Shown here: piece by piece, positions 1,271-46,042 of the stretch
How the letters are laid out: every line of letters begins with the position of its first letter
Position numbering within the stretch: position 1 is the first letter of the stretch
IMG/VR virus record: IMGVR_UViG_3300028558_000791
Location: 124,001-188,000 of that record
Strand: one strand, 5' to 3'
DNA length: 64,000 bases
Made by a program: the position numbers and the translations under genes
Notes under the pieces: generated by a model
Told to the model about the DNA's origin: nothing
The model's input: only the letters and a program-made list of their open reading frames with translations
Database searches by the model: none

Positions 1271-1461
1271 AGACTAAAGAATGGCTTCTAAATCGTAAAA
1301 GAGATTTGGAAGAAGAGCTTGAGGGTTACGACGAGCTAATAGAAGAGCTGAAAGAAGTTGAAAAAGCTCTTGCTGCTTTGGAACCCAAAAAGAAAAAGAC
1401 CGAGTGTAATGGATGCGCAAGTGGTTGTGATATCTGTCGCACTGGCCCTTACTACCGATGA
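1267..1461 (+). CDS. small coiled-coil protein with C-terminal CxxCxxxCxxC
   Basis: ATG overlaps trpS stop (ATGA); CNGCASGCDIC. Confidence 0.6.
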   Translation: MKTKEWLLNRKRDLEEELEGYDELIEELKEVEKALAALEPKKKKTECNGCASGCDICRTGPYYR

Positions 1462-1688
1462 AGGATATCATGTCAGATCAGGACGATGAAGATTTGAGGT
1501 TGCGTGATAAACTGGCAGCGGCTGCCCTTCCAGCTCTCATTCAGAGGTATAACGATAAAGTTGATAGTAAATGGATTGTAGATGGTGAGGTAACAGAACG
1601 ATTTGGTTATGATGCAGATCAGATAGCTATCTTGGCGTATAAGATAGCTGATGCGATGCGTAAAGCTAGATTACAAGCTTTTACTTGA
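1458..1688 (+). CDS. conserved phage hypothetical protein (LRD..AAAAL..AY.IADAM type)
   Basis: recognisable small phage protein pattern; ATGA coupling. Confidence 0.65.
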   Translation: MKDIMSDQDDEDLRLRDKLAAAALPALIQRYNDKVDSKWIVDGEVTERFGYDADQIAILAYKIADAMRKARLQAFT

Positions 1689-1696
1689 GAAAAACA

Positions 1697-2902
1697 ATGA
1701 AAACATTTGAAGACTTGGAACAACGTGGTCTAATTAAACAGACAACTAACACAGAGAAGTTACGTGAACTACTCAACTCAAATGTTCCAGTCACGTTTTA
1801 CATTGGGTTCGATCCGACCGCTGACAGTTTGCATGTAGGACATCTACTGCAAATTGTTACGGCCAAACGTTTAGCTGATGCGGGCCATCGCCCCATCATG
1901 CTAATCGGCGGGGCTACCGCATTGATCGGTGATCCCACCGGGAAGTCTGAAATGCGCAAGATGCTTTCTCACTCTGACATTAGAGTGAATGGTGAAGCTA
2001 TTGCTGGGCAGATTCAGCAGATAATGGGAAAAGATGTTGAAATCATTTCCAACATGTCATGGTTTGACGATGCAGATTTCCTAACTGTGTTACGCACCAT
2101 TGGTCCATTCTTTTCCGTCAATGAAATGTTACGTGCGGATTGTTTCAAGAGCCGCATGGAACATGGACTCTCTTTTCTAGAGTTCAACTACATGATTATG
2201 CAGGCGCAAGACTTTCGCATGCTTCATCTTGAAGAGGGTTGTGCCCTTCAGATTGGCGGAGATGATCAGTGGTCTAACATGTTAGCCGGCATTCATTTGA
2301 TCCATAAGAAGCATGGGCAAGAAGTATTTGGCCTAACGCTTCCTCTGTTGGTCAATTCAGATGGAACTAAAATGGGAAAGACTGAAAAAGGGGCGGTCTG
2401 GCTTGACCCAGAGAAAACTTCTCCATTTGATTTCTTTCAGTTCTGGCGTAATATTGAAGATGACAAAGTCAAGCAGTGTATCAACTTTTTTACGCATGAA
2501 GTTAATTCAGAGGGTTCTATTCTGTTAAACATCAATCAGCACAAAAAGTTTCTAGCTTTCGAAGTTACGAAACTTGTTCACGGCGAATCGGCAGCACAGC
2601 AAGCGCTCGAACAGGCGGAAGCCTTGTTCGAGAAACGAGACACCTCTGAATTGGAAGCAACGCCGATTCTAGAAGGAACTCACATCCTTGAAGCGATAAT
2701 CAAATGCGGCTTTGCGAAATCTCGCACTGAAGCAAGAAATTTGATTCTCAACAAAGGTATTACAGTTAACCAAGAAGTGCTAACTGATCCAACTATCATT
2801 GTCTCTAAAACTAATTTTGGAAACGAATTGATAATTCGAAAAGGTAAAAAGCATTTCTCTCGCTTGCTTATTGAGGATAAATGCCTAGACCAGAATCTGT
2901 AA
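1697..2902 (+). CDS. tyrS: tyrosyl-tRNA synthetase
   Basis: YIGFDPTADSLHVGH, QIGGDDQWSN, KMGKT, C-terminal S4 domain; ATG at 1697 preferred to TTG 1685. Confidence 0.97.
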   Translation: MKTFEDLEQRGLIKQTTNTEKLRELLNSNVPVTFYIGFDPTADSLHVGHLLQIVTAKRLADAGHRPIMLIGGATALIGDPTGKSEMRKMLSHSDIRVNGEAIAGQIQQIMGKDVEIISNMSWFDDADFLTVLRTIGPFFSVNEMLRADCFKSRMEHGLSFLEFNYMIMQAQDFRMLHLEEGCALQIGGDDQWSNMLAGIHLIHKKHGQEVFGLTLPLLVNSDGTKMGKTEKGAVWLDPEKTSPFDFFQFWRNIEDDKVKQCINFFTHEVNSEGSILLNINQHKKFLAFEVTKLVHGESAAQQALEQAEALFEKRDTSELEATPILEGTHILEAIIKCGFAKSRTEARNLILNKGITVNQEVLTDPTIIVSKTNFGNELIIRKGKKHFSRLLIEDKCLDQNL

Positions 2903-3192
2903 CTAACGAAGACCTAGCTAAATGGTCAGAGAAAATTGATAACGACCCGCTCATCTCCGAGGGCTTAGCCCAGAACCCAATCGTTCGAGAGGTTTGCTAT
3001 GCGGGACAATGGTTAGCTGACAAGCTAACGGAACTGGACTGCCCAGATCATTTGATTGGTAGGATGATGTATACGGCAGCTCAGATTTCCTTTGGAAGAA
3101 AAGACACATGGGAAATTCATATCGATATGCTTTATCGTTTCATCGATGGCACATTGGAATTCGAAATGGAACCTGAGGAAAATCTTAACTAA
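2881..3192 (+). CDS. hypothetical protein
   Basis: GAGG SD upstream; 103 aa. Confidence 0.7.
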   Translation: MPRPESVTNEDLAKWSEKIDNDPLISEGLAQNPIVREVCYAGQWLADKLTELDCPDHLIGRMMYTAAQISFGRKDTWEIHIDMLYRFIDGTLEFEMEPEENLN

Positions 3193-3566
3193 TGCTTCAT
3201 GAATTGATAGACAGAGATGAACCGCAATGCCTCTACTGTAATTCCGCGGTCAATCTGACTCTCAGTCTCAAAAGTGAATGGCTTCCCAATACTTCTCTAA
3301 AAGTAGACAATGAAGTCATGTCTTGTAGCAAATGTAAAGAAGTATTTGAGATACACTCTATCCAGGGTGGAGATGGTAACACAGAGTATACTGGAATGAC
3401 CTTTACATGTAAGGGCTATCGAGTATTTAATAACTACATTGAATCTTACTTTGACATCAGTGATGCTAAAGGAAAACATATTGTGGCTATTCCATTTTTT
3501 GAACCGGACTTCTCTGATAGGGATAAATTGTACGAGAAGCTAAAAACATATCTTATATTTTCTTGA
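3192..3566 (+). CDS. zinc-ribbon protein (CxxC..CxxC)
   Basis: CLYC/CSKC; ends KLKTYLIFS. Confidence 0.7.
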   Translation: MLHELIDRDEPQCLYCNSAVNLTLSLKSEWLPNTSLKVDNEVMSCSKCKEVFEIHSIQGGDGNTEYTGMTFTCKGYRVFNNYIESYFDISDAKGKHIVAIPFFEPDFSDRDKLYEKLKTYLIFS

Positions 3567-3679
3567 ATTGTGTCGCTTAGTGTGGGACCCGCGAATCTTT
3601 TTATTTATGCTACGGTTGACTCTAATCTTAGCATGACTAGATTGTATAGTGATCCCTTTATTGTAAGGAAAGAAAAAGC

Positions 3680-4810
3680 ATGCCTACTCAACAGCCGCAA
3701 CAAATGGCCACATCAGATTTCAATCTGCAGAAACTAAATACCAAAGAACTTTCGGAGCATACTTCCGCTACCATTCAGATGGGTGGCAACATTGCTGTGT
3801 TTGGCCGTCGTGGAACGGGCAAGACCGAAATCTCCAAAGCAGAGATTAAGAAGCTGGACTTCAAAGAAGTCTACTTGAATCTCTCCGTTATGGAGCGAGT
3901 CGACATGGGAGGTTATCCTGATGTCATGGCTCCCGCAAGAAAGAGCGATTACGTCAACTTCTTGATGCCAAAGTTCTATGAAGAGATGATTGATGGTAAG
4001 CAAGGCGTAGTTGCTTTGCTGGACGAAGTAGATAAGGCTGACCCAAGTCTTTGGGCACCTTTGCTTGAGTTCACTCAGTTTAGAACTATCAACGGTAGGC
4101 CGTTGCCAAACTTACACGCCATCATTATGACGGGTAACCTTATCTCTGAGGGTGGCGCTCGTCCTAGCTTGCCATTGCTGGATAGAACTGAAAAGTTCTT
4201 GGTTGAAGCTGACGCTGCCTCTTGGTTAGATTGGGCCGGTAAGTCTGGTCGCATTCACCCATCTGTCACTGCGTATATTCACGACCACTCTAGAGATTTG
4301 TTCGGAGCGGTTGACCCAGAAGAAAGATATGCTGACCCATCCCCTCGTGGTTGGGACCGAGCCTCTCAGATTCTCTTTGCTGGAGAAGGTCATGGATGGA
4401 ACCCATATCTCCTCAACAAGAAGGTGTCTGGTTGCGTTGGTAAAGATGCTGGCATCAAGTACTCTAACTACTATGAGCACTACATGGAACTAGTTCCAAT
4501 GGTTGAAGCCATCTATGCTGGTCAAGACGTGTCCGCTAAGTATAGCTCACTTGAGCCAACCAAGAAGTTGGTTGCTTGTATGATTACCTGCACCCGCTTG
4601 GCCAATCAGTTGGACCATGTGGAAGTTGGTGGTGAATTGCCTCCTGCCATCAAGCATGTTGGTAAGTTCTTACACAAGGTCTCTCATGAGAATGTTTTGG
4701 TTGCCGTTCGCAGCCAGGTTCAGATTGAGCGTCTGGTGAAGTTCAATTTGGATGAGCATCCTGATTGGAGTCAGGTTCTTGGCAGAATCAATAAGGAAGT
4801 TGATCAGTAA
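3680..4810 (+). CDS. MoxR-like AAA+ ATPase
   Basis: Walker A GRRGTGKT, Walker B LLDEVD, TGN sensor, SPRGW; next to a vWA gene. Confidence 0.9.
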   Translation: MPTQQPQQMATSDFNLQKLNTKELSEHTSATIQMGGNIAVFGRRGTGKTEISKAEIKKLDFKEVYLNLSVMERVDMGGYPDVMAPARKSDYVNFLMPKFYEEMIDGKQGVVALLDEVDKADPSLWAPLLEFTQFRTINGRPLPNLHAIIMTGNLISEGGARPSLPLLDRTEKFLVEADAASWLDWAGKSGRIHPSVTAYIHDHSRDLFGAVDPEERYADPSPRGWDRASQILFAGEGHGWNPYLLNKKVSGCVGKDAGIKYSNYYEHYMELVPMVEAIYAGQDVSAKYSSLEPTKKLVACMITCTRLANQLDHVEVGGELPPAIKHVGKFLHKVSHENVLVAVRSQVQIERLVKFNLDEHPDWSQVLGRINKEVDQ

Positions 4811-4848: not shown

Positions 4849-6639
4849 ATGAAATTTAGCAAAGTAATAGGGAAAATTGATCCCAAATTAGTATCTCAGG
4901 CAGAAGATAAACTGTCCAAGGTATTCCTAGAGTTAGCCGTTAGGTATGACAATGAACATGTCGCAACCGGTATGGGTGGAGATCCTTTAATCTTTAGCCT
5001 TATGTATCCGGTTGAGCACATCTGTACTTTGAACATTCCAACAGCCGCAACTGATGGTAAGAGATACTATTGGAATCCCAGATTCATTCTCAAGCATTCC
5101 CAAAGAGGCTTGAGAATAGTTTGCGCCCATGAAGCGTGGCACGCTATCTATATGCATCCATCTCGTAGGGGCTCCAGAAATCCAAAGCTTTGGAATATTG
5201 CCGTAGACTATATCGTTAATGGTACAGTTATGGAAGACTTCAAGGCCCGTCGTAAAGATGCTGCTGGTGAGTTTACGAAACATCTAGGGCGCTTCATGCC
5301 TTTTGATACCTTCTGTGAACTTGTCAAGAATCCTTATGCAAAGATTGCTGGATTCGAAGACATCAATTTTGGTGTCCAAGATCCGAATGCCAACACTCCA
5401 GACGTAACTTTTAAAGCTCCGAATGAAGATCGTGAGCTAACTCCGGAAGAACAAAAGGCTTTGGAGAAGCGTGAGAAAGGTGTACGATTCTATTATGCTG
5501 ACCCTAACCTCGATGAGGATATGAAGAAGCCTGAGAAAATCTACGACATCCTTTACAATCTCCTTCCTAAATGCTCCAAATGTGGACGCCTTGGCGTTTA
5601 TCACAAGCCTGGCTCCAAGAAGGGCCAGAAGGGTCAAAAGTCTCAACAGGGACAGCAGGGACAGCAAGGTCAGAATGGACAACAAGGACAGTCTGGGCAA
5701 TCTGGTCAACAAGGTCAAGGAAATGGTCAAAGCCAGCCAGGTCAAGGTTCTGGTCAAGGACAGCCGAGCGATCAGCATGAACACGGAGATGGACAGCAAT
5801 GTGGCTGCCCGGACCATGGACATGGTAATCAGCCTGGTGATGGACAAGGACAGGGACAAGGATCTGGTTCTGGTGGTTCTCAAACACAGGGACAAGGATC
5901 TGAAGATGGACCTTGTGATGAATGTGGTGGTGGACAAGATATCTTTGGACTAGGTGGTACGGTAGACGATCACATGGATTCGGAAGAGTCTGAAGAAAAA
6001 TTGGCCAAGAGAATCTCTGATGCTATGGAAGCTGCCAGGAAAATGGCAGGACATGTTCCGGCTGCATTGGAAGACGAACTTGGTAAGCTAACCGCTCCCA
6101 AAGTAACTTGGCAGGATATTATCCGCACTCGTCTATTGAAGGCTAGGGCTGGTAACGGTCGCAATGATTGGACTCGTTTCAAGACTCGTCCAATGTTCTC
6201 TGGGCTAATGATTCCTAAGAGAAGGAACTTCTACGCTCACTTCGGCTGCTTGGTTGACACCAGCGGTTCTATGAGTAAGGATGACATGGCTTTCGGTCTG
6301 TCGCAACTTATCGCATTGGATGAGCGCTCTGAAGGTACTATCGTGCCGGCTGACGCTACAATCTATTGGGATAAGGCTGTCAAGATTAAAAAATGCGATC
6401 CTGAAGAGATCAAGAAGTTCGTGCCAGTTGGTCGCGGTGGAACTATGTTTGCCGACTTTTTTGATCAGTATGAGAAGAATATTGGTCACTGTGACTTTCT
6501 AATTGTTATCACAGACGGATTCTTATTGGATACTGACATCGCCAACATGAAACACCCAGGCGTAGATGTCATCTGGTTGATTACTAGTGGAAGCGCTTTC
6601 AATCCTCCATTTGGTCGAGCCTTCGATTTACGTGCATAA
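4849..6639 (+). CDS. DUF2201-type metallopeptidase-vWA protein with Gln/Gly-rich linker
   Basis: TAATDG, HEAWH, WNIAVD; MIDAS DTSGSMS, GRGGT, ITDG. Confidence 0.88.
   Translation: MKFSKVIGKIDPKLVSQAEDKLSKVFLELAVRYDNEHVATGMGGDPLIFSLMYPVEHICTLNIPTAATDGKRYYWNPRFILKHSQRGLRIVCAHEAWHAIYMHPSRRGSRNPKLWNIAVDYIVNGTVMEDFKARRKDAAGEFTKHLGRFMPFDTFCELVKNPYAKIAGFEDINFGVQDPNANTPDVTFKAPNEDRELTPEEQKALEKREKGVRFYYADPNLDEDMKKPEKIYDILYNLLPKCSKCGRLGVYHKPGSKKGQKGQKSQQGQQGQQGQNGQQGQSGQSGQQGQGNGQSQPGQGSGQGQPSDQHEHGDGQQCGCPDHGHGNQPGDGQGQGQGSGSGGSQTQGQGSEDGPCDECGGGQDIFGLGGTVDDHMDSEESEEKLAKRISDAMEAARKMAGHVPAALEDELGKLTAPKVTWQDIIRTRLLKARAGNGRNDWTRFKTRPMFSGLMIPKRRNFYAHFGCLVDTSGSMSKDDMAFGLSQLIALDERSEGTIVPADATIYWDKAVKIKKCDPEEIKKFVPVGRGGTMFADFFDQYEKNIGHCDFLIVITDGFLLDTDIANMKHPGVDVIWLITSGSAFNPPFGRAFDLRA
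5620..5905 (+). repeat. low-complexity coding repeats (GQ/QG; ggacaa/ggtcaa units)
   Basis: imperfect ggacagcaa/ggtcaagga repeats encoding GQQGQ.. inside the vWA gene. Confidence 0.8.
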
Positions 6640-7133
6640 TGAACGAGAAAGATTGCATATTTGGCTGCGACCATGAAAGGCACAAACCTTATCATGAGAA
6701 GTTTGATCGCGCTCAGGAAGGTAATACCGAGCGCCAGTATTACTGGAACGTAGCCAAATATGTTTTAGACTCCAAGCTTTCCCCTTCTGATGGGGATGAC
6801 TTAGAGCTTTTTGAAGATGCTATCTTTGATAGCCCTTGGGGACGGGTTCATATTTATTTCTACGAGTGGTTGTTCCAAAACTATTACAAATCTCAACCAG
6901 AAGTAGTTGTTCAGATTTTTACTAGATACTTAGAGTATTTAGGGAAGATATCAATGCTATTTGTAGATGATGCATTTAGTTTCATCTTTAAGCGAGAAGA
7001 TTACAAACTGATTGAAAAGCTATTAGCGATAATGCCTTTGACTACCAAGTTGCAATTCATTAAGACCTCAGAGAAATACCCTAAGGCGATACAGTCAGTT
7101 CCCAAATTGAAGTTGTACAACTTATTCTCGTGA
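6639..7133 (+). CDS. hypothetical protein
   Basis: TAATG coupling; ends KLKLYNLFS. Confidence 0.7.
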   Translation: MNEKDCIFGCDHERHKPYHEKFDRAQEGNTERQYYWNVAKYVLDSKLSPSDGDDLELFEDAIFDSPWGRVHIYFYEWLFQNYYKSQPEVVVQIFTRYLEYLGKISMLFVDDAFSFIFKREDYKLIEKLLAIMPLTTKLQFIKTSEKYPKAIQSVPKLKLYNLFS

Positions 7134-10667: not shown

Positions 10668-11627
10668 ATGAAAATGTCAAAGAGAGTTAACTGGACAATT
10701 ACCGAGAACAATGTCTCGGTAAACTATGATGGCGAAACACACATCGTCCCTCGCAGTGATGCGTTGGCCGATCGTTTGATCAAAGCAGTCAAAGAGAACA
10801 AGTTGCAAGAAATCCCTGCACTTGTTTCGGCTGCAAAGCGAATCGAGATTTTCTCGAAGGGTAACTTCGTGGTTCAGGATGGACGGGTAATGATTAATGG
10901 ACTTGCGGCACCTGAAGTGCTTAGCAACAAGATCATCCGATTCTCCAACGAAGGTTTGCCTTTCCAGCCTTTGCTCAAGTTCGCTGAGAACTTGCAGAAG
11001 AACCCTTCCTTCCGAGCGGTCAATGAACTCTTTACCTTCTTGGAGAAGAATGACCACCCTCTGACGGAGACTGGTAACTTCATTGCTTACAAGCGTGTCC
11101 GTGGAACTTTCCGAGACATTCACTCCAACACCATGGACAACTCGGTTGGTAACCTGGTAGAGATTCCTCGTAACCAAGTTGATGAGGACTCTAACCGTAC
11201 GTGTAGCCATGGTTTGCACGTTGCCAACTGGACCTATGCTCACACGCAGTTCGCCAGTTCCGATGCTAGCTCCGATGTCATGTTGGAAGTAGAGGTCAAT
11301 CCGGCCGATGTTGTTGCTATTCCTGTGGACTATAACAACGCCAAGATGCGTGTCTGTAAGTATAAGGTTTTGGGTGTGGTTACTACTCCGTTCGACCCAA
11401 GCCTTGCTCTTCGAGTAGTCGATCCGGATTATACTGGTTCGGCAGCTTCTGAGTTGGACGAAGAAGATGAAGAGAATGATACCTGCGAATACTGTGGCGA
11501 AGAGGTATATGATGGTGGCCGCCTCTGTAGCGAATGCGAATACGATGAGGAAGAAGAAGAGGATGACGAAGATGACGAGGTTGTCAGCGAGCGTTATCCT
11601 TACGAGGATGAACTTGAGGGTGAATGA
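10668..11627 (+). CDS. rIIB: rIIB-like protein with acidic Zn-finger tail
   Basis: GNFIAYKRV, RNQVD..CSHGLHV, VNPADVVAIPVDYNNAKMRVCKY. Confidence 0.9.
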   Translation: MKMSKRVNWTITENNVSVNYDGETHIVPRSDALADRLIKAVKENKLQEIPALVSAAKRIEIFSKGNFVVQDGRVMINGLAAPEVLSNKIIRFSNEGLPFQPLLKFAENLQKNPSFRAVNELFTFLEKNDHPLTETGNFIAYKRVRGTFRDIHSNTMDNSVGNLVEIPRNQVDEDSNRTCSHGLHVANWTYAHTQFASSDASSDVMLEVEVNPADVVAIPVDYNNAKMRVCKYKVLGVVTTPFDPSLALRVVDPDYTGSAASELDEEDEENDTCEYCGEEVYDGGRLCSECEYDEEEEEDDEDDEVVSERYPYEDELEGE

Positions 11628-11857
11628 GAATAACTGTTGTCCATGATGGGATAACATATCATTGTTCATTTTCGTCAGATGGATTGATTGGGATTCAATA
11701 TGTTAAGAATAGTGCCTCTGGGCTTCCATTTCTGAATACTACTGATATCTCTATTTTTGCAATAAAGCAATCATTACCGGTCTGGGTTAATGAGCGACTA
11801 CCAGTATCAGTTAAAGAACAGGTAGAAAGAGTTATTAAATTGTGGGCGTTTCGTTAA
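11624..11857 (+). CDS. hypothetical protein
   Basis: ATGA coupling; ends IKLWAFR. Confidence 0.6.
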   Translation: MRITVVHDGITYHCSFSSDGLIGIQYVKNSASGLPFLNTTDISIFAIKQSLPVWVNERLPVSVKEQVERVIKLWAFR

Positions 11858-13053: not shown

Positions 13054-14100
13054 ATGTTCACCTTGAGTCACATGTTTGATTTAGATAAAGTTGACCCAGA
13101 ATTCAGAATCTTAACTGATAAACTATTCTTCACTGATAGAACAGACCTAGACCTTTCTAAGTTCAAAGATTTGTTTGAAAGCAGCGAGTTCAATTACAGA
13201 TATTTGTGGGACCGTTTTTCTCGTGGAATAGAAATCTTTTGGGACGAAAACTTCTGGGTAAACCGATTAGATATACTTCTATCTCTAGAATCTAAAAGGC
13301 TTGAGACAGAAATTAGCGCATTACTTCTAAATAGATTTAGAAGACTCATTGATACTCGTCATAACCCAGACCCAAAACTATATACTGAGTTCTCGCAATT
13401 CATTGCTTGGACAAAAACAAAAGCTTCACGTAAAGAAGATATTCAAACCTTTCGAGAATACTTTGTCAGCCTAGTTCATTCTATGCAAGTAGATAGACTA
13501 ACACATACTGTTAGTCATTTCATTCCACATCTCTTTCAAGATTTGAATGAGTATCTTACCTTATTAGGTAAGAGAGTTAGTGAATCCGCTAGGAGCTTTG
13601 AAGTTTTACGACAACTGGAGAGCCAAGGCGTTCCAATTGACAAAGGGCCAATCTTCAAATTATCTAGCAATCTTTTATTGAAAAGGGCACTCAATCGTCC
13701 CAACAGACGTTCATTCTTTGGCCTCTTGGATGACCCATCTGTTATGGCTCACCTCAAATCAGAGTATAAGCCGGAGAATCGTAGTCGCTTAGTTGACCTT
13801 ATCAAAATGTGTGACTTCAAAGAAATTGAGGAGCGCCATCTGCGTAACGTCAAAAACCTGTTAGAGTTAGACGCTTCTGTTACAGAAGAGTTACTTGTTT
13901 CATATGCTGATAGTCTCTATGCCCGCGGAACTGGGTATAAAGGAGCTAATGCTAAGCGATTGGTGCGACTTTGCAAAATGTTCCCAGCTTTCTCTCCTAA
14001 AAAAGTTTTAGTCTACCTTTCTACTCATAGTAGAATGTCTGATATCAAACATCTGATATCAGCCTTCCCGGATCTAAAAACTTTGATCCCTTTCGTGTAA
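13054..14100 (+). CDS. hypothetical helical protein
   Basis: 348 aa; GATATA-N8-ATG; ends LKTLIPFV. Confidence 0.75.
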   Translation: MFTLSHMFDLDKVDPEFRILTDKLFFTDRTDLDLSKFKDLFESSEFNYRYLWDRFSRGIEIFWDENFWVNRLDILLSLESKRLETEISALLLNRFRRLIDTRHNPDPKLYTEFSQFIAWTKTKASRKEDIQTFREYFVSLVHSMQVDRLTHTVSHFIPHLFQDLNEYLTLLGKRVSESARSFEVLRQLESQGVPIDKGPIFKLSSNLLLKRALNRPNRRSFFGLLDDPSVMAHLKSEYKPENRSRLVDLIKMCDFKEIEERHLRNVKNLLELDASVTEELLVSYADSLYARGTGYKGANAKRLVRLCKMFPAFSPKKVLVYLSTHSRMSDIKHLISAFPDLKTLIPFV

Positions 14101-17857: not shown

Positions 17858-18787
17858 ATGTTCAAGCAATCAAAATTCGAGACTCTTCTCCGAGAGTTGG
17901 AAGGCCCCACTGCGTCTAAAAAACAATTAGACAAGTTGCGCGACTATCTAAAGAATGATAATGTCTTCCACCCATTGTTCGAAAGCTACCTCTCTAAAAG
18001 GTTGAGAGATAACATTCATCCGGAGCGTTTGTTGAATATGGCTTATCACTTAGAGAAGAGTGATGAGACTAGCTATCTAAGTAGAACTCTCAACCGGCAG
18101 GTGGTATCGCACATGCTACTCAAAGATGAGTGTTTCGATCAGTTTTACTTCATGAGCCGACATGATATACGTACTGATAGACACGTTCTTAATAGTCTAG
18201 TCGAGAACTTCTTTGAATATGGTAGTGATTCGTTTGATGCCCTAGATAAGATTGCTCCTTACATCAATACTGATAAGTATGAGATAATACTAAAAATCAT
18301 GGATTCCAATGAGTCGCGAAACTATCGCACTCTTAGGTTGATAGAGAAATTACCAACGGAAGAGTATCGTCTATTATTGATTCGTGCTTTGGAAACTCAT
18401 AGCCTTCAGTTTATTAAAATCATGGAGTGGCCAAATGCTGCGACTACTAAGCATATTTCAGAATTACTTATTCAAAATGGTGATGATGATAAGTTTGCTG
18501 TTGCGTTAAGGAATACTCTAATTCTACCTTCTCAATTGGAAACTGCCTATAGCCTTAGTACTTTGATAGAGGATCACATTCAACATATCCCTGTTACTGC
18601 TGCCCGTCTATACTATCGGGCCGAACAAGAAGAGCGGTGGGAATACCTATTGATATTGGGGGCTAATAAGAATAAGAAAGAGTTATTACGTAGTATTGTT
18701 AAATCTAAAGATCAAGAAATGATTGATAAGTTTTTTGCGATCTACAAGAATTCTCCAGAGGTAAAGCACCTGGTTCCTTTTATGTGA
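17858..18787 (+). CDS. hypothetical helical protein
   Basis: 309 aa; ends VKHLVPFM. Confidence 0.75.
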   Translation: MFKQSKFETLLRELEGPTASKKQLDKLRDYLKNDNVFHPLFESYLSKRLRDNIHPERLLNMAYHLEKSDETSYLSRTLNRQVVSHMLLKDECFDQFYFMSRHDIRTDRHVLNSLVENFFEYGSDSFDALDKIAPYINTDKYEIILKIMDSNESRNYRTLRLIEKLPTEEYRLLLIRALETHSLQFIKIMEWPNAATTKHISELLIQNGDDDKFAVALRNTLILPSQLETAYSLSTLIEDHIQHIPVTAARLYYRAEQEERWEYLLILGANKNKKELLRSIVKSKDQEMIDKFFAIYKNSPEVKHLVPFM

Positions 18788-18829: not shown

Positions 18830-19936
18830 ATGTCTAATGCACTAAACTTACAAGAATTAGATCAGGAGCAGGCGCTCAATCTTACCAAATTCTTTATCCA
18901 ATCAAAACATAATGTCTTTCTATTTGGGAGGCGTGGGGTCGGCAAGACTGACATTGCTATCCAGGCAGCCAAAGAATGCGGCCTCAAAATTGCTTACATC
19001 AATCTAAGTGTGATTGAAAGACCAGATTTAGCTGGTTATCCCGATTTGAGTTCGCCTGGAGATATTGTTAACTTCAAATCTCCCTATTTCCTACCCAAAC
19101 TATTGGATGGATACAAGGCAGACAGTGTAATCCTCTTCGATGAGGTAGATAAGGTTCAGCCAGAAGTAACCGCTCCTCTGTTAGAGATTCTACTCTTCAA
19201 GAAGATTAATGGTATCCCAATCAACGCAGTTTCTTGTATCCTGACCGGTAACCTAGCTAATGAAGGCGCCTATTCCAACGAGATCAGTTCAGCTCTTTTG
19301 GATCGTGGCGCCAAGTTCATTCTACAATTTAACTTCGAGAAGTGGGTTGATTGGGCCAAGGCTCATAACGTTCATGACCTTATCTTAGGATTTTTGCGCA
19401 GTGACCCTGAGTTTGCTTGTGGTAAGATAGAAGATACTGTTTATGCCTCACCATCTCCAAGAAGTTGGACATGGGCATCTGATGCGTTGCTACGCGCCAA
19501 AGAACTCAAGATGTCCGATATAGAGTCGGTCACCCAAATCATCTCCGGTTATGTCGGAAGTGAAGCGGGAATGAGGTTCAAACTTTGGTATGAACATTTC
19601 CGTAAGTTTGAACCTCATGTTCATACACTAATTGACCGTGGCGAAATGTCTCTCAATTACGGAGACTTAGTTCCAACAGAGAAGTTGGTCTTTGTTATAT
19701 CTGCATGTTATTATGCGAAACAAAGAGTCTTTAAGGACAAATCTAAGAATAGGTTTGCATATCTAGAGAACCTATGTAACTTTTTCCATCAATGTAAAGT
19801 AGAGTCGGAAGTCCAAATTATGGGACTGCATAACTCTTTTGATTTCGATATGATTAGGGTACACAAGCTTTATACTTGTAAGCCCTTTTTTGACCTCTTC
19901 AATAAGTTGAGTGAAAACGTTACGTTCAAGAAGTGA
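18830..19936 (+). CDS. MoxR-like AAA+ ATPase, paralog of 3680-4810
   Basis: GRRGVGKT, LFDEVD, TGN, SPRSW; colinear similarity to the first copy. Confidence 0.9.
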   Translation: MSNALNLQELDQEQALNLTKFFIQSKHNVFLFGRRGVGKTDIAIQAAKECGLKIAYINLSVIERPDLAGYPDLSSPGDIVNFKSPYFLPKLLDGYKADSVILFDEVDKVQPEVTAPLLEILLFKKINGIPINAVSCILTGNLANEGAYSNEISSALLDRGAKFILQFNFEKWVDWAKAHNVHDLILGFLRSDPEFACGKIEDTVYASPSPRSWTWASDALLRAKELKMSDIESVTQIISGYVGSEAGMRFKLWYEHFRKFEPHVHTLIDRGEMSLNYGDLVPTEKLVFVISACYYAKQRVFKDKSKNRFAYLENLCNFFHQCKVESEVQIMGLHNSFDFDMIRVHKLYTCKPFFDLFNKLSENVTFKK

Positions 19937-25566: not shown

Positions 25567-25594
25567 TTGACGCCCTATTTGTCAGAATTACGGT
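25567..25594 (+). promoter_or_regulatory. sigma70-like promoter, probably leaderless
   Basis: TTGACG-16-TACGGT, 6 nt before ATG 25601; no SD. Confidence 0.4.
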
Positions 25595-25600
25595 AGTAGT

Positions 25601-26353: not shown

Positions 26354-26357
26354 TATC

Positions 26358-28106: not shown

Positions 28107-28820
28107 ATGAACAAATACATGTTTGAGAGTGATTATAGCACAGATTCTGTTAGATGGCTTAATAAAATCACTGAAATCAATCCAAAACTTAGCGATCACG
28201 TCGAACTGGAAAAGCTTCAAGATGAAATCATTGCGAACAATGATGCTGCCCTAGCCTACTTCTTTGCTTGCGAATTTTCTTATAAGACTTATCGAATGCA
28301 AAAGGTCATTCTAGATAAGAGAGATCCAAAATATGCTTTTGTCTTTGCACAAAGTATTCCTAATGCTTCTATCAAATCATTACAAGACATTGTAGTCGAA
28401 TCTAAAAAGGTTAAGTATATTACCAAATTCGCTTGTTTTATTAAGCAAGCCGATCGCAAGCTCCTTGAAGGGCTGATCGTGAAATCTAAGAACGTCAAGT
28501 ATATTCATATGTATTTGAAACATGTCAAGAATGCTGACGTTACTAAATTCAAACAAATCATCATAGAATCCGGCAAGCCTAGATATCTTTTCGAATTAGC
28601 CAAGCATTCTACTTCTAAAGAAGATATTGAGATGCTAGAAGACTTAATCATCAAATCAAACTCATTTACATATATGAGATTGTTTGCTGAGAAGATTAAG
28701 ATGGCCGATGTCGACAAGATTGAGCAAGCTGTCTTAGCCACTGATAATGGTCCTGAGATCAAAAAGTTCGCTAAGTATGTGCGTAAATCTAAGATGAAAC
28801 AATTTTTATTGGTGATGTAA
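28107..28820 (+). CDS. helical repeat protein
   Basis: recurring ~25-aa units (L.D.I..S...Y...FA..I..AD). Confidence 0.7.
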   Translation: MNKYMFESDYSTDSVRWLNKITEINPKLSDHVELEKLQDEIIANNDAALAYFFACEFSYKTYRMQKVILDKRDPKYAFVFAQSIPNASIKSLQDIVVESKKVKYITKFACFIKQADRKLLEGLIVKSKNVKYIHMYLKHVKNADVTKFKQIIIESGKPRYLFELAKHSTSKEDIEMLEDLIIKSNSFTYMRLFAEKIKMADVDKIEQAVLATDNGPEIKKFAKYVRKSKMKQFLLVM

Positions 28821-32644: not shown

Positions 32645-33121
32645 ATGCCTATTGCACGTTCTGTTGCAGATTGTATTCAAGAACTAGAATACCAACTAGC
32701 TAAACAAAAAGCAGTCCAGAAAGAATTCCCCGATGCCAAATGGCATTGGAAAACTGGATTTCAATCCAAAATGGTCAATCAAAAGTATACTAAATTCACT
32801 TTTAGTAGACATGGCCGTGGGTTATACGTAGTCCCTTACTGTGAAGTAACAGTAAGTTATAATGGGAATTCAGAAACAGTATTGGTTTATTCTAAACCCA
32901 AATACAATAGATTAGTCTATCTATCTTGGAATGTCAATCTAAGAACATATGTAATGAAGTTTGCTAGGTTAACTATCAACTTGAAACATAACGAATTTAG
33001 AAATGACATGCTAAATAGCTGCCGCGCTGAAATTATGTCCTTCATCAAGAACAATCCAAGTTACAAGATGGACGACAAGAATCTAGAGCCCAGGCTGAAG
33101 AAGCTTCTAATCTTTACCTAA
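32645..33121 (+). CDS. hypothetical protein
   Basis: GATATA-N9-ATG; ends LKKLLIFT. Confidence 0.7.
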   Translation: MPIARSVADCIQELEYQLAKQKAVQKEFPDAKWHWKTGFQSKMVNQKYTKFTFSRHGRGLYVVPYCEVTVSYNGNSETVLVYSKPKYNRLVYLSWNVNLRTYVMKFARLTINLKHNEFRNDMLNSCRAEIMSFIKNNPSYKMDDKNLEPRLKKLLIFT

Positions 33122-37033: not shown

Positions 37034-37034
37034 T

Positions 37035-39432: not shown

Positions 39433-39433
39433 A

Positions 39434-42180: not shown

Positions 42181-42212
42181 TATCTTCCAATCTTGATCTA
42201 ATTAGATTTTAT

Positions 42213-42965
42213 TCACATCGATGGACCATGATACGGAATAAAAACAGGTTTGATTCGGTATGTATAAGCGTAGCAGTTGTTTTGGAATTTTACTAAATTG
42301 TTCTTATGAGCGGCATCTTTGAATTCTCGATACCCTTCAGTAGCAACAACAGTTTCATCAAAATGATGTCCCTTGTCTTTTAGATAGCCCACTTCCCATC
42401 CAACTAACCTGGCCCTAAAGAAGAAATCGGCATCTTCCTCTCCATAGATTCCATAATCTGTAGTGAAGTAACCAATCTTTTTATGTAGGTCCCTATGGAA
42501 AACTGAACAGGCTGTTCCAAGGTTGCCAGCCTTCTTGAGTTGGAAAGTCTTATCATTCCTAGTAACTAGATCATAGTTGTCGTTTTCAAAACTCACACCA
42601 ATGGTAATTCTGTTACCTTCTTTGTCTTTGATTATGTCTGTACATTGAGACAGCCATTTATCGGGGAACTCAACGTCATTGTCTATAGTGGCAAGGAACT
42701 CATCCTCCGCCCCATACTTATTTGCCATTAGAAGACCTTGGTTTCTTCCCATAGCAATTCCTTTGTTTGTAGGATTGAAATGAATCTTACAATCAACTGA
42801 TAATTGTTCCGGTAGTTTTTCTAAAAACTCTTTTGTTCCATCAGTAGATCCATTATCTACAATCAATAATCTATATGGGCCATCAGTAGTTTTGAAAAAG
42901 TTATCAAACATTCGTTTTGTGAATTCGAGCCTGTTATAGGTTACTAGCATAATTGAAGTCGTCAT
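42213..42965 (-). CDS. family 2 glycosyltransferase
   Basis: VTYNR, VDNGSTDGT, GRNQG, DND, YGEEDAD; GAGG SD before ATG 42965. Confidence 0.9.
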   Translation of the reverse strand: MTTSIMLVTYNRLEFTKRMFDNFFKTTDGPYRLLIVDNGSTDGTKEFLEKLPEQLSVDCKIHFNPTNKGIAMGRNQGLLMANKYGAEDEFLATIDNDVEFPDKWLSQCTDIIKDKEGNRITIGVSFENDNYDLVTRNDKTFQLKKAGNLGTACSVFHRDLHKKIGYFTTDYGIYGEEDADFFFRARLVGWEVGYLKDKGHHFDETVVATEGYREFKDAAHKNNLVKFQNNCYAYTYRIKPVFIPYHGPSM

Positions 42966-43026
42966 GATATCCTCATATAACTTAAGGGTGAGCGGTGCGC
43001 CTTTCAACGCATATAAAAGGTGAATT

Positions 43027-43218
43027 ATGGATCCAAATGAAAAGAAAACCGTCAAAATTCCAGTTTGGGATCTGGAAGTGGATGAAATTATAGAGATGGA
43101 AATAGATCAAGACGCCCTAGATGCTATGGATAAAGCTGACAAAGAAGCTGAAGAGCGCTATGAAGAGGCTTGCAGACGTGACCGAGAAGAACTAAGATAT
43201 GTGAGGGATGATGACTGA
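43027..43218 (+). CDS. small acidic protein
   Basis: AGGTG SD; 63 aa. Confidence 0.6.
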   Translation: MDPNEKKTVKIPVWDLEVDEIIEMEIDQDALDAMDKADKEAEERYEEACRRDREELRYVRDDD

Positions 43219-44083: not shown

Positions 44084-44872
44084 ATGTCAAACACATTGAA
44101 AGACCGCGTTGAACGATACCAATCGGTCAGCGACCACAGATTACTCGACCGAGTACCAATTATCATTTGCGTCAACGGGCGAGGATTTTCCAAAGTAACT
44201 CAGTTGCTTGACAAGCCCTATTGTCCAAAATTTGCCGAATGCATTCTCTCCACAACTTTACGACTTTGCCAAGACGTCGAGGGTTCACTCTTTGCCTACC
44301 AGCACAATGATGAGATTGTTATTGTAGCTCGTAATGACCAGAAGGATGACACTACTCCTTGGTATGACAATAAGCTTCAGAAAATCTGCTCAGTTACTTC
44401 AGCTATTGCAACAATGCACTTCAATCAAATGGCAGCTAAGGTTGATTTGAATATCACTGGCGCCCCTATCTTTACATCTCAGATATTTGCCGTACCAACT
44501 CTTAGTGAGGCGGTTAATACTATCATCTACAAACAACAGCAGAATTTCCATACCTCGATTCAATCCGCTTGTTTATACGAGCTTATTAAGAAGTATGATA
44601 AGAACAATATCAAAGAGATGATGGCCGGATTGAGCGTGGATGAAAAGGTAGACCTACTTCATCAAGAGGTAGATATCAATTTCAATGACTATCCAGTTTC
44701 TTTTAGACGAGGAGCGGCTGCTTACAAGGTTCCTATTGTATCCGGGGACTCAATGAGAAATAAATGGCATCTCAATCTTGAGCCGCCAATATTTACCAAG
44801 GACCAGTCCTTCTTATCTAACATCTTTAAAAATGGCGCGGATATCTTTAGACAAGAAAGCTTTGGCCGGTAA
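44084..44872 (+). CDS. Thg1-like tRNA(His) guanylyltransferase / 3'-5' polymerase (divergent)
   Basis: L.DR...Y, II.VNGRGFSK.T, KPY, AYQHNDEI, WYD.K.QK..SV, FRRG. Confidence 0.8.
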   Translation: MSNTLKDRVERYQSVSDHRLLDRVPIIICVNGRGFSKVTQLLDKPYCPKFAECILSTTLRLCQDVEGSLFAYQHNDEIVIVARNDQKDDTTPWYDNKLQKICSVTSAIATMHFNQMAAKVDLNITGAPIFTSQIFAVPTLSEAVNTIIYKQQQNFHTSIQSACLYELIKKYDKNNIKEMMAGLSVDEKVDLLHQEVDINFNDYPVSFRRGAAAYKVPIVSGDSMRNKWHLNLEPPIFTKDQSFLSNIFKNGADIFRQESFGR

Positions 44873-45078: not shown

Positions 45079-45152
45079 GCTGGCTTAGTATAACGGCATT
45101 ATTCTTCCCTTGTAACGAAGAGAACCGAGTTCGACTCTCGGCGCCAGCTCCA
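45079..45152 (+). tRNA. tRNA-Thr(UGU)
   Basis: cloverleaf; loop CT-TGT-AA, GTTCGA T-loop, U73, encoded CCA. Confidence 0.9.
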
Positions 45153-45242
45153 CTGCTAGCGGGTTTATACCCTAGCCGCAATCATCCCTTCAGGAATATA
45201 GGTACGTATTTAACCTAGATGATTGCATGAGAATACAATTAA

Positions 45243-45317
45243 GCCCATGTAGTATAACGGTTATTACCCGTCTTTGGTAAAGACGAAAATTGAGTTCGAC
45301 TCTCAACTTGGGCTCCA
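45243..45317 (+). tRNA. tRNA-Thr(GGU)
   Basis: CGTCT-TT-GGT-AA-AGACG arm, U73, CCA. Confidence 0.92.
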
Positions 45318-45410
45318 GCGTCCTGTTTCACTAGTTTTCGGTTCAGTGAACAACATCTACTACTTCCTCAAAGTATGGATAGTTAATGGACGATTCTTTA
45401 AACCGAATAA

Positions 45411-45486
45411 GCCCGTGTAGCTCAGTTGATAGAGCACCTCACTAGTAACGAGGATGTCGGTGGTTTGATTCCACTCGCGGGCTCCA
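45411..45486 (+). tRNA. tRNA-Thr(AGU)
   Basis: GCCCGTG/CGCGGGC acceptor, CCTCA-CT-AGT-AA-CGAGG arm, U73, CCA. Confidence 0.88.
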
Positions 45487-45487
45487 A

Positions 45488-45706
45488 ATGTTTAAGACGA
45501 ACGTTTATGTAAGAGGTATTCGACAATCACCTACTTATTGGTACATTGCACATTCCACTTTGTTTTTCAGAACAGACAAAGAATCCGCCATCAAAATGCT
45601 GCATGTACATGATGTTGTAGAGATTGATAAATTTTTTCTAGGCGTCAGATATTCTAGTAAGTCATATGTAATTGAAATACCTGCTAACCAGCTCAAACTA
45701 AGCTAA
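45488..45706 (+). CDS. hypothetical protein
   Basis: 72-aa ORF starting 1 nt after a tRNA CCA. Confidence 0.55.
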   Translation: MFKTNVYVRGIRQSPTYWYIAHSTLFFRTDKESAIKMLHVHDVVEIDKFFLGVRYSSKSYVIEIPANQLKLS

Positions 45707-45775
45707 TGTCGTATAGTGGTATTACGCTGCCTTCGTAACGCAGTCACGTGAGTTCGATTCTCACCTTTAGCTCCA
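45702..45775 (+). tRNA. tRNA-Thr(CGU)
   Basis: CTGCC-TT-CGT-AA-CGCAG arm, GTTCGATT T-loop, U73, CCA. Confidence 0.9.
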
Positions 45776-45778
45776 AAC

Positions 45779-46042
45779 ATGACCATTACATATTTTGAAG
45801 ATGTAGATGAATGCATAATGGCCGCTTACAGATATGTAAGAGATACTGGCAACAAAGTTGAGAGTTATTCTCATTCTGATGGTGGTGATGCAATCGGAGT
45901 AATATCTGCTGATGGCACCGCATTCATGATGTGGATGGAGCATCATAATACTAGCCCTAAAAGAACTTTAGCTCGACTTATTCACGAACATAAAATTACT
46001 GTTGTACAATTTATTAACAAACAGCTTTTACCTTTTCTTTAA
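45779..46042 (+). CDS. hypothetical protein
   Basis: starts 3 nt after CCA; ends NKQLLPFL. Confidence 0.6.
   Translation: MTITYFEDVDECIMAAYRYVRDTGNKVESYSHSDGGDAIGVISADGTAFMMWMEHHNTSPKRTLARLIHEHKITVVQFINKQLLPFL

What the first reader, a model, noticed from the sequence alone, without database searches (positions are those of the whole stretch)
1458..46042. Unrelated proteins share a C-terminal K-x-L/Y-x-x-F-x-stop motif
Seen: KLKTYLIFS* (3566), KLKLYNLFS* (7133), VIKLWAFR* (11857), DLKTLIPFV* (14100), EVKHLVPFM* (18787), RLKKLLIFT* (33121), INKQLLPFL* (46042) and KARLQAFT* (1688), with variant KMKQFLLVM* (28820). The proteins differ in size and show no other visible similarity. Inference: a common docking or targeting peptide for one hub. 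Candidates are a sliding clamp (compare T4 C-terminal clamp-binding peptides), the MoxR/vWA chaperone, the phage ClpP/ClpR, or a packaging or compartment-import signal.
Basis: partly seen in the sequence, partly recalled or inferred. Interest (0 to 1): 0.68.

Follow-up and report, generated by a model that had tools for sequence, protein, structure and literature searches.

The report
Shared C-terminal tail on huge-phage proteins
About fifty proteins of this 481-kb phage, most of them copies of an undescribed zinc-ribbon gene family but some clearly unrelated, end in the same short basic-hydrophobic tail with a phenylalanine one residue before the end. The tail is strongly conserved across related phages, so it probably plugs into one common partner that is still unknown.

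Summary
All nine C-termini read as stated. Genome-wide (481-kb IMG/VR phage record, my 665 gene calls), 17 proteins end K-x-[LY]-x-x-F-x against 0.29 expected, and 46 end hydrophobic-x-x-F-x against 7.4. Every strong profile match lies exactly at a stop codon.

"Unrelated proteins" is only half right. Twenty-six carriers are diverged paralogs of one undescribed family: an N-terminal CxxC zinc ribbon, a beta-sheet body and a C-terminal helix. Twenty-one sit in one tandem array outside the window, five longer ones lie just upstream of it, and window 3192-3566 is a further member.

The tail also sits on proteins outside the family. These include an all-alpha solenoid (17858-18787), proteins of 164, 158 and 348 aa, and a lytic-transglycosylase protein next to the portal gene. 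A matrix trained on family tails alone finds six such non-family C-termini against 0.29 expected.

In two ortholog sets the tail is at or near the most conserved stretch, and chance look-alikes lose it in orthologs. The end at 28820 is not a member.

Best reading: a portable C-terminal docking element whose register (Phe, one residue, carboxylate) is read by one partner. The partner is not identified. A T4-type clamp is absent. The neighbouring MoxR-like ATPase/VWA-peptidase genes and incorporation into the virion head are the leading guesses. No known family matches.

The parts
3192..3566 (+). 124-aa member of the undescribed zinc-ribbon family (two CxxC pairs, seven-strand beta body, C-terminal helix 110-123). 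Tail class A, ending ..KLKTYLIFS.
   Evidence: tail; a body-only family HMM hits it at E 9e-11; 43 homologs keep the tail invariant down to about 39% identity. AF2 pLDDT 89.9; no Pfam match above cut-off and no PHROG.
6639..7133 (+). 164-aa non-family carrier ending ..KLKLYNLFS. Its start overlaps the stop of the VWA-peptidase gene.
   Evidence: top-scoring non-family C-terminus (20.1 bits) with a matrix trained on family tails only; the G001 ortholog (78% identical) has an identical tail; no family match.
13054..14100 (+). 348-aa (342 from my start) non-family carrier. Tail class C, ending ..LKTLIPFV.
   Evidence: orthologs at 73% and 52% identity keep L..PF plus one residue; no BLAST similarity to the 309-aa carrier.
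17858..18787 (+). 309-aa all-alpha armadillo/HEAT-like solenoid. Tail class C, ending ..PEVKHLVPFM. It lies directly upstream of a MoxR-like AAA+ gene.
   Evidence: 36 of the 37 proteins listed, down to 39% identity, end PEVKHL[VTA]PF[MLI]; the exception is a 239-aa fragment; the tail is among the lowest-entropy windows. AF2 pLDDT 91.2, 21 helices; only weak ARM-repeat fold matches; the adjacency to the AAA+ gene is kept in a distant relative.
32645..33121 (+). 158-aa non-family carrier ending ..RLKKLLIFT.
   Evidence: 11.7 bits with the family-trained matrix; orthologs at 78% and 56% identity keep the tail.
1458..1688 (+). 72/76-aa protein of a widespread small phage family (PHROG 2201-like). 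Class B-like tail ending ..RLQAFT.
   Evidence: phrog_2201, E 7e-8; all 20 proteins returned (the window's own plus 19 homologs) end R-L-x-[AST]-F-T. G002 has the variant ..RLQVFK.
11624..11857 (+). 77-aa protein ending ..IKLWAFR. Probable class B carrier, not checked in orthologs.
   Evidence: 9.8 bits, ending at the stop; no ortholog in the four relatives' fragments.
45779..46042 (+). 87-aa protein ending ..KQLLPFL. Class C tail, not checked in orthologs. It lies 5 nt upstream of the phage tmRNA gene.
   Evidence: 6.4 bits, ending at the stop; tmRNA at 46047-46403.
28107..28820 (+). Not a member of the motif.
   Evidence..FLLVM, no Phe at -2; orthologs end FLLVW and FLLMV; negative score.
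3680..4810 (+). MoxR-like AAA+ ATPase, paralog 1. Candidate partner by neighbourhood only.
   Evidence: weak AAA_2 match; clearly paralogous to 18830-19936; the order carrier, AAA+, VWA is kept in a 491-kb relative.
4849..6639 (+). Protein with a DUF2201 N-terminal metallopeptidase domain and a VWA-like domain. Candidate partner by neighbourhood only.
   Evidence: Iyer et al. 2021 (PMC7824862) describe this MoxR-vWA(peptidase) pair in jumbo phages; complex test with the 164-aa carrier gave no answer.
18830..19936 (+). MoxR-like AAA+ ATPase, paralog 2, directly downstream of the 309-aa carrier.
58337..59532 (+). Two Clp protease genes. The first (58337-58921) lacks the catalytic Ser and His (ClpR-like). 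The second (58933-59532) keeps them. Candidate partner, untested.
   Evidence: two PF00574 matches, E about 1e-45; sequences read.

Best explanation
The tail is a portable C-terminal docking element. Its last 9-16 residues fit the pattern [KR](-9), hydrophobic(-8), K(-7), x, L/Y(-5), hydrophobic(-4), small or hydrophobic(-3), F(-2), any(-1), then the free carboxylate.

Shown:
- It is strictly terminal.
- It is strongly enriched.
- It is at or near the best-conserved stretch of its proteins across a clade of roughly 430-510-kb phages.
- It occurs on an undescribed, fast-diverging zinc-ribbon family (26 copies here, 21 of them in a tandem array) and on several unrelated bodies.

Inferred:
- Because the Phe always sits exactly one residue before the end while the last side chain varies, a single pocket probably reads Phe plus the terminal carboxylate. 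The principle is like the HbYX tails of proteasome activators.
- The variable bodies would then be the cargo or the target-binding parts that the tail brings to one machine.

Partner (guess only): a phage-encoded machine conserved in the clade. The MoxR-like AAA+/VWA-metallopeptidase system ranks first because of gene neighbourhood. Incorporation into the prohead ranks second, because a lytic-transglycosylase carrier lies next to the terminase and portal genes. ClpP/ClpR comes third.
For: Enrichment and strict terminality.

Independent cross-family test: a matrix trained on 26 family tails was scored on the 633 non-family proteins. Six scored 4 bits or more against 0.29 expected, and four scored 8 bits or more against 0.04. 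Poisson P is 6e-7 and 1e-7.

Unrelated bodies:
- No BLAST similarity once the tails are removed.
- A body-only HMM recruits only the array, window 3192-3566 and a few weak zinc-ribbon hits.
- AF2 gives an all-beta body and an all-alpha body.

Selection on the tail:
- For a 9-residue window, the tail is the lowest-entropy window of 116 in the 124-aa ortholog set. In the 309-aa set only 3 of 301 windows are lower. Polar tail positions (K, T, S, E, H) are invariant too.
- Orthologs in four related IMG/VR fragments keep the tail. Four chance matches lose the Phe or the register.

The array diverges faster than its flanks yet keeps the tail. Best-hit identity is 24-56% (two further hits cover only the tail), with 6 of 21 members undetectable, against 28-71% for the flanking genes.

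Tail classes A and B intergrade inside the array itself.

Neighbourhood: 3 of the 4 outer neighbours of the MoxR/VWA genes are carriers. Post hoc binomial P is 0.001-0.004. Two of these adjacencies are kept in distant relatives.

The SLT-domain carrier lies two genes after the portal gene, in the order TerL, portal, 411-aa gene, SLT carrier.
Against: - No partner was found. The one complex prediction (VWA-peptidase with the 164-aa carrier) scored 0.00, which the tool rates as no answer.
- In the zinc-ribbon family, AF2 makes the tail a confident helix (pLDDT about 94 over residues 111-120). It follows the last strand directly, with no flexible linker, as expected of a structural element. In the solenoid, the last helix also has pLDDT about 85.
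- I could not inspect coordinates, so whether the Phe is buried in cis is unknown.
- Most carriers are paralogs, so much of the raw count reflects common descent.
- The neighbourhood statistic is post hoc, and synteny is conserved across the whole clade, so the adjacencies seen in relatives are not independent.
- About fifty clients is many for one hub.
Confidence: 0.5

Rival explanations
1. The tail is a structural signature only. It is the C-terminal amphipathic helix that caps the beta sheet of the zinc-ribbon family and is conserved because it is part of the fold. The non-family cases arose by 3'-end recombination or convergence, and there the tail serves as an ordinary terminal helix. No common partner exists.
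For: - AF2 places a high-confidence helix (110-123) directly after the last strand.
- The hydrophobic positions -12, -8, -5, -4 and -2 fall on one helical face (my reading of the sequence).
- The profile search of 1.84 billion proteins finds the class A tail almost only on 58-132-aa proteins, about 50 of 61 with an N-terminal CxxC. That marks it as a family feature.
- With 26 copies in the genome, there is ample template for spreading a 3' end.
Against: - Polar, presumably exposed tail residues are invariant across orthologs.
- The same register (Phe, one residue, end) holds on an all-alpha solenoid whose tail contains two prolines.
- Non-family tails are under strong purifying selection in orthologs.
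- Tail DNA is not conserved between carriers, so there is no recent recombination.
- One array member has lost the tail and another has Leu for Phe, so the fold tolerates change.
Confidence: 0.25
2. The tail is a membrane-targeting amphipathic helix of the MinD/FtsA kind. Basic residues flank a hydrophobic and aromatic face, the helix inserts into the cytoplasmic leaflet, and the common 'hub' is the inner membrane.
For: The composition and position of class A and B tails fit: Lys/Arg plus Leu, Tyr, Phe or Trp, at the extreme C-terminus, predicted helical. The resemblance to MinD and FtsA tails rests on my own knowledge and was not tested here.
Against: - The conservation is position-specific, with an invariant Phe register. 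Lipid binding seldom demands that.
- Class C tails contain prolines at -3 and -10 and form at most a six-residue helix.
- The helix has high pLDDT and continues the fold, unlike typical free membrane-targeting tails.
Confidence: 0.08
3. The tail is a sliding-clamp binding peptide, as on T4 gp43, gp33 and gp55 or on bacterial beta-clamp partners (QL[SD]LF). It would tether many proteins to the replication fork.
For: The core L-x-[LVIAP]-F near a C-terminus resembles positions 2-5 of the bacterial clamp-binding motif (my own knowledge). The phage has a DnaE-type polymerase.
Against: - No gp45 domain, no family B polymerase and no DnaN N- or C-terminal domain were found in the genome.
- The phage's own polymerase ends in an acidic tail without the motif.
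- The Gln of the bacterial motif is replaced by varied residues.
- About fifty clamp clients, mostly hypervariable small proteins, would have no precedent.
Confidence: 0.05

Closest known systems
T4 internal proteins and their capsid targeting sequence (CTS)
   Same: Both are sets of fast-evolving small phage proteins of differing sequence that share one short, conserved terminal peptide. In T4 the peptide directs them to one destination, the prohead scaffold (established knowledge, not tested here).
   Different: The T4 peptide is N-terminal and is cut off by the prohead protease. Here the peptide is C-terminal, has a different sequence, shows no evidence of cleavage, and no virion data exist. 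Most carriers here also share a zinc ribbon.
HbYX C-terminal motif of proteasome activators (PAN, Rpt subunits, PA200, Mpa/Bpa)
   Same: Both have a hydrophobic residue, a penultimate aromatic residue, any last residue and a free carboxylate at the extreme C-terminus. The register, not the last side chain, is what is conserved.
   Different: Here the aromatic residue is Phe, not Tyr. The motif extends upstream to -9 with basic residues. Carriers are about fifty small proteins, not ring ATPases. No 20S or HslV-type ring was sought or found; only ClpP/ClpR is present.
Encapsulin cargo-loading peptides and scaffold C-termini that bind HK97-fold shells
   Same: A short C-terminal peptide on otherwise unrelated cargo proteins docks to the shell interior. 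One carrier here lies in the head-gene module.
   Different: The encapsulin consensus (Gly-Ser-Leu core after a flexible linker) is absent. The tail here is helical and directly continues the fold. The major capsid protein of this phage was not identified.
Poxvirus ankyrin/PRANC (F-box-like) multigene family
   Same: A large, diversified viral multigene family combines variable target-binding bodies with one conserved C-terminal docking element that plugs into a proteolytic machine. This is the model for the most novel reading.
   Different: The virus, host, fold and motif all differ. No link to proteolysis is shown here beyond neighbouring peptidase, AAA+ and Clp genes.
Zinc-ribbon expansion of Bacillus phage G (about 35 copies; Iyer et al. 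2021, PMC7824862)
   Same: A lineage-specific expansion of small zinc-ribbon proteins in a phage of about 500 kb.
   Different: The tail profile finds nothing in the phage G genome, and tblastn with an array member finds nothing in 50,697 phage records. The expansions are analogous, not the same family as far as these searches can tell.

Membership tests
T4-type clamp-binding C-terminal peptides | A gp45-type sliding clamp is encoded by the phage | tested here: not met
   PF09116 finds no match at E<=1 in the whole genome. The DnaN domains PF00712 and PF02768 also find nothing.
T4-type clamp-binding C-terminal peptides | The replicative polymerase carries the same C-terminal peptide | tested here: not met
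   There is no family B polymerase. The DnaE-type polymerase ends in an acidic stretch without the motif.
HbYX docking motif | Hydrophobic, Tyr, any residue at the extreme C-terminus with a free carboxylate | tested here: inconclusive
   The form is met with Phe in place of Tyr in all 46 loose matches. Position -3 is A, L, V, T, P or I, and the last residue varies. Whether it docks into a ring protease was not testable.
HbYX docking motif | A 20S/HslV-type ring with inter-subunit pockets as receptor | not tested
   Only ClpP and ClpR-like genes were sought and found.
ssrA/ClpX-type C-terminal degron | The tail ends in Ala-Ala (LAA or MAA) like the tmRNA tag | tested here: not met
   The phage's own tmRNA encodes the tag ANDNAFAMAA. 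No carrier ends that way.
T4 capsid targeting sequence | An N-terminal peptide removed by the prohead protease | tested here: not met
   The motif is strictly C-terminal. Cleavage is not testable with these tools.
Encapsulin cargo-loading peptide | A C-terminal peptide with a Gly-Ser-Leu type core after a flexible linker | tested here: not met
   The tail logo has no such core. AF2 shows a helix directly after the last strand.
Any curated protein family (Pfam-A, PHROGs) | A match above the family cut-off for the carriers | tested here: not met
   - Nine window carriers: no Pfam match above cut-off.
- PHROGs match only the 76-aa protein.
- Of three array-family proteins scanned (109, 130 and 213 aa), none reaches a cut-off; one has a weak sub-threshold CKS hit.
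- Ten further carriers: only the SLT domain, just below its cut-off.
Undescribed zinc-ribbon/C-terminal-helix family (defined here) | N-terminal CxxC, a body match to the family HMM, and the tail at the stop | tested here: met
   - All 26 family ORFs of the locus have an N-terminal CxxC, and 24 have the tail.
- Window 3192-3566 matches the body-only HMM at E 9e-11.
- 62 representatives in 1.84 billion proteins match the tail profile, and the match ends at or one residue before the C-terminus in all 61 with a reported stretch.
- The other window carriers are not recruited.

The most novel reading that the evidence does not exclude
The hypervariable zinc-ribbon array and the other carriers form a viral adaptor system. 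Each variable body would bind a different host (for example defence) protein. The common HbYX-like C-terminal tail would plug all of them into one phage-encoded AAA+/peptidase machine (MoxR-like ATPase with VWA-metallopeptidase, or ClpP/ClpR), or load them into the capsid for injection. This would be a phage counterpart of the poxvirus ankyrin/PRANC adaptors or of T4 internal proteins, using a C-terminal signal that has not been described.
Probability: 0.12. Interest if true: 0.85.

Novelty: new variant of a known kind. Interest (0 to 1): 0.6.

Why it matters
Huge phages carry hundreds of genes with no assigned function. A single short tail that marks about 7% of this phage's genes would group them into one pathway. 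It would also give a simple experimental handle: tail-tagged reporters, point mutants of the penultimate Phe, and pull-downs.

If the tail is a targeting or adaptor signal, it would reveal how a huge phage routes a large, fast-evolving arsenal of small proteins to one machine or compartment. That could also become a portable tag. If the tail turns out to be structural, the result still defines a large new zinc-ribbon protein family, apparently clade-specific and absent from Pfam and PHROGs.

Tried and rejected
- **DNA-level explanation** (promoter, terminator or coupling signal at the gene ends). Rejected: there is no shared nucleotide motif and the codons vary.
- **Complex prediction** of the VWA-peptidase with the 164-aa carrier scored 0.00 in both runs. 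The tool rates this as no answer, so it counts neither for nor against binding.
- **Fold searches.** The 124-aa model gave only generic beta-sheet matches: PDB Foldseek best E 0.03, VIA-align best Z 6.1, ESM Atlas TM about 0.5. BFVD returned only uncharacterized proteins of an uncultured phage, TM up to 0.57. The 309-aa model gave only weak ARM-repeat matches.
- **Feature search in the ESM Atlas** gave no lead above 0.9.
- **Near-identity DNA search and tblastn against GenBank phages** found no relative of the carriers. The nearest deposited huge phage by rIIA, LR756500.1, shares only 40 of 665 proteins and lacks the motif. It serves as a negative control but not for phyletic profiling.
- **Bacillus phage G** lacks the tail.
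- **tblastn with the VWA-peptidase** found only the peptidase domain in N4-like phages and in one 469-kb Sinorhizobium phage. The MoxR/VWA idea could therefore not be tested in cultured phages.
- **Degron idea.** I asked whether the tail equals the phage tmRNA tag. It does not.
- **Literature search** found no description of the motif.
- **Short metagenome contigs** carrying family members gave no useful context.
- **Not done:** the sequencing-run and read tools were not used. Only two structures could be predicted, so class B carriers were not modelled.


Full report
**What the window is.** The window is bases 124,001-188,000 of a single 480,838-bp contig with 43.4% G+C. IMG/VR classes it as a complete virus record. 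It is a huge tailed phage. The window encodes:
- rIIA and rIIB;
- Trp- and Tyr-tRNA synthetases, adenylosuccinate synthetase, two polynucleotide kinase-phosphatases, three RNA ligases, Thg1 and RNase T;
- two MoxR-like AAA+ ATPases, a protein joining a metallopeptidase domain to a VWA-like domain, and an SPFH protein;
- a sugar-biosynthesis block on the minus strand;
- a ClpR-like plus ClpP pair;
- a tmRNA and seven tRNAs.

Elsewhere the genome has a DnaE-type polymerase. It has no family B polymerase, no gp45 clamp domain and no detectable DnaN domain. No close relative is in GenBank phages. Metagenomic contigs of about 427-511 kb carry orthologs.

- Genome-wide, 17 proteins end K.[LY]..F.$ against 0.29 expected. 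The expectation is the same whether each protein's last 30 residues are shuffled or the pattern's internal frequency is used.
- 46 proteins end [LYFIMW]..F.$ against 7.4 expected.
- A 16-residue profile of the tails was searched against all 10,061 six-frame ORFs. Every hit above 7.2 bits ends exactly at a stop, including five array ORFs outside the seed. Hits below that score are scattered, as expected of noise.
- The DNA at these gene ends shares no motif.

**What the tail looks like.** The logo reads: R/K at -9, L/I/V at -8, K at -7, L or Y at -5, a hydrophobic residue or K at -4, A/L/V/T/P at -3, F at -2 (fixed by the search pattern and kept in orthologs), and a variable last residue, mostly S, L, W or T. 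Three flavours intergrade:
- class A ends like ..KLKTYLVFS;
- class B ends like ..NLKAFW or ..NLKAFL;
- class C ends like ..L-x-P-F plus one residue.

Class A and class B tails both occur on members of the same tandem array, here and in a relative. I therefore treat them as one element.

**Are the proteins unrelated?** Partly.

With the last 20 residues removed, the carriers show almost no BLAST similarity to each other. Reading the sequences tells more. Twenty-six ORFs at genome 403-417 kb all start with a CxxC zinc knuckle, and 24 of them carry the tail. Twenty-one are tandem, often overlapping genes of 107-174 aa, and five are about 200 aa.

A family HMM built without the last 14 residues recruits the array and window 3192-3566 at E 9e-11. 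It recruits none of the other window carriers.

A tail-only profile was run against 1.84 billion representative proteins. It finds 62 proteins at E<=0.001, nearly all 58-132 aa. The match ends at or one residue before the C-terminus in all 61 with a reported stretch. About 50 of the 61 new ones have an N-terminal CxxC.

So class A marks an undescribed family, absent from Pfam and PHROGs. BFVD holds look-alikes only as uncharacterized proteins of an uncultured phage.

**The tail is also on other bodies.** I trained a position matrix on the 26 family tails only and scored the C-termini of the 633 non-family proteins.
- Six reach 4 bits against 0.29 expected.
- Four reach 8 bits against 0.04 expected.
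- The top 11 ranks all have F at -2.

These non-family carriers include window 6639-7133 (164 aa), 32645-33121 (158 aa) and 13054-14100 (348 aa). AlphaFold2 confirms that the bodies differ.
- The 124-aa family member is a seven-strand beta structure with a C-terminal helix at 110-123 (pLDDT 89.9).
- The 309-aa carrier at 17858-18787 is an all-alpha solenoid of 21 helices (pLDDT 91.2), with only weak armadillo-repeat matches.

A 382-aa carrier with a lytic-transglycosylase (SLT) domain lies two genes after the portal gene, in the order TerL, portal, 411-aa gene, SLT carrier.

**Conservation.**
- The 43 homologs of the 124-aa protein range down to about 39% identity. The invariant columns include L113, K116, T119, Y120, F123 and S124. 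The last nine residues form the lowest-entropy window of the protein.
- Of the 37 proteins listed for the 309-aa carrier, 36 end PEVKHL[VTA]PF[MLI]. The exception is a 239-aa fragment. Only 3 of 301 nine-residue windows are more conserved than the tail.
- All 20 proteins returned for the 76-aa query (the window's own plus 19 homologs) end R-L-x-[AST]-F-T.
- I fetched four related IMG/VR fragments. Orthologs of 13 carriers there keep the tail.
- Four loose matches that I had judged to be chance (genome 85477, 93674, 173286, 188732) lose the Phe or the register in at least one ortholog. This is a useful internal control.
- One relative (G005) has a syntenic array with 25 profile matches.
- Array members diverge much faster than the flanking genes but keep the tail.
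- Two huge phages outside the clade, LR756500.1 and Bacillus phage G, lack the motif.

- The end at 28820 is not a member.
- 11857 and 46042 fit the profile but have no ortholog check.
- 1688 belongs to a widespread small phage family (PHROG 2201). The profile matches stop a few residues before the end. The last five residues may therefore be a clade-specific extension, but this is weak evidence.

**How it most likely works.** Four facts argue for a docking or targeting element read by one partner, with Phe plus the terminal carboxylate as the key:
- the absolute register (Phe, one residue, end) with a variable last side chain;
- invariant polar positions within the tail;
- occurrence on unrelated folds;
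- purifying selection stronger than on the rest of each protein.

The principle is that of HbYX tails. That comparison comes from my own knowledge and is not a membership claim.

Against this reading, AF2 makes the family's tail a confident helix directly continuing the fold, so a structural role is not excluded. I could not inspect the coordinates.

**Who the partner might be.**
- *Clamp.* Weakened by the absences listed above and by the acidic end of the polymerase.
- *ssrA-type degron.* Excluded in form. The phage tmRNA tag ends in MAA.
- *MoxR-like/VWA-peptidase genes.* Three of their four outer neighbours are carriers, post hoc P of 0.001-0.004. Two of the adjacencies persist in relatives whose orthologs are 39-41% identical. 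Iyer et al. (PMC7824862) proposed that this pair acts in virion assembly and processing.
- *Prohead incorporation.* The SLT carrier beside the portal gene points in the same direction.
- *Peptidases next to the array.* A trypsin-like and a zinc metallopeptidase gene flank the array, and a release-factor gene lies just upstream of it among the longer family members. This arrangement is conserved in G005.

All of this is context, not proof. The single complex prediction allowed gave no answer.

**Verdict.** The motif is real, selected and specific to this clade. It is the signature of a new zinc-ribbon multigene family and is also borne by unrelated proteins. A common-partner docking role is the best explanation, at about 0.5. 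A purely structural role is the main rival, at about 0.25. The partner is unknown. Terminal targeting peptides on diversified viral gene families are a known kind of system. This one is a new variant: it is C-terminal, has a new sequence, and has no identified receptor.

Noticed in passing
window 46047-46403 (+): Phage-encoded tmRNA with the tag peptide ANDNAFAMAA, 5 nt downstream of a tail carrier. The tag looks proteobacterial, which may hint at the host.
   Followed up: partly
window 48924-48997 and 49183-49255 (+); genome-wide stop usage; L002 6809-7903: Two tRNAs with the anticodon CTA (amber suppressors, labelled tRNA-Pyl by ARAGORN). TAG ends only 37 of my 665 gene calls, 5 of the 248 genes of 200 aa or more, and none of the 46 carriers. 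A release-factor gene with an SPF (RF2-type) motif lies just upstream of the zinc-ribbon array, among the longer family members. Together these suggest possible TAG recoding. I named no other genetic code and did not test this.
   Followed up: partly
window 45079-45775 (+): Four tRNA-Thr genes with the four anticodons TGT, GGT, AGT and CGT in a row, plus tRNA-Arg(CCT) at 51455-51530.
   Followed up: no
window 58337-59532 (+): A tandem Clp pair. The first copy lacks the catalytic Ser and His (ClpR-like) and the second keeps them. No ClpX-like gene was recognised next to them; the 466-aa and 149-aa neighbours have no Pfam match.
   Followed up: partly
window 3680-4810 and 18830-19936 (+): Two clearly paralogous MoxR-like AAA+ ATPases. 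Only the first is paired with the VWA/metallopeptidase protein (4849-6639).
   Followed up: partly
window 15150-17249, 22490-28064, 30001-30666, 44084-44872: A dense RNA-repair and tRNA-repair set: an RlaP nucleotidyltransferase, RNase T, two polynucleotide kinase-phosphatases, three RNA ligases (two Rnl2-like, one T4 Rnl1-like) and a Thg1-like tRNA-His guanylyltransferase.
   Followed up: no
window 33269-43055 (-): The only long minus-strand block of the window. It encodes GDP-mannose dehydratase, epimerases, an aminotransferase, glycosyltransferases and a 596-aa methyltransferase-domain protein, and has lower G+C (38-40%).
   Followed up: no
L002 10983-11327 and 13660-14001 (genome 410983-411327, 413660-414001): Two array members depart from the tail. 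One has lost it altogether, and one has Leu in place of the penultimate Phe. These are natural variants that could serve as controls in experiments.
   Followed up: partly
genome 69467-69700 and 242566-246294: In tblastn against the relatives, the first 71 residues of this 77-aa class B carrier hit (35-38% identity) ORFs that end like the 1242-aa protein of the head-gene module. I did not compare the carrier directly with that protein in this genome.
   Followed up: no
window 20871-22094 (+): The SPFH/Band 7 protein is one of only 40 proteins shared with the otherwise unrelated 462-kb phage LR756500.1 (45% identity). The AAA+ gene at 18830-19936 and rIIA/rIIB are also shared.
   Followed up: no
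window 61971-62954 (+): An FtsK/HerA-type ATPase, followed by a protein of at least 348 aa with no family match that runs off the window end.
   Followed up: no
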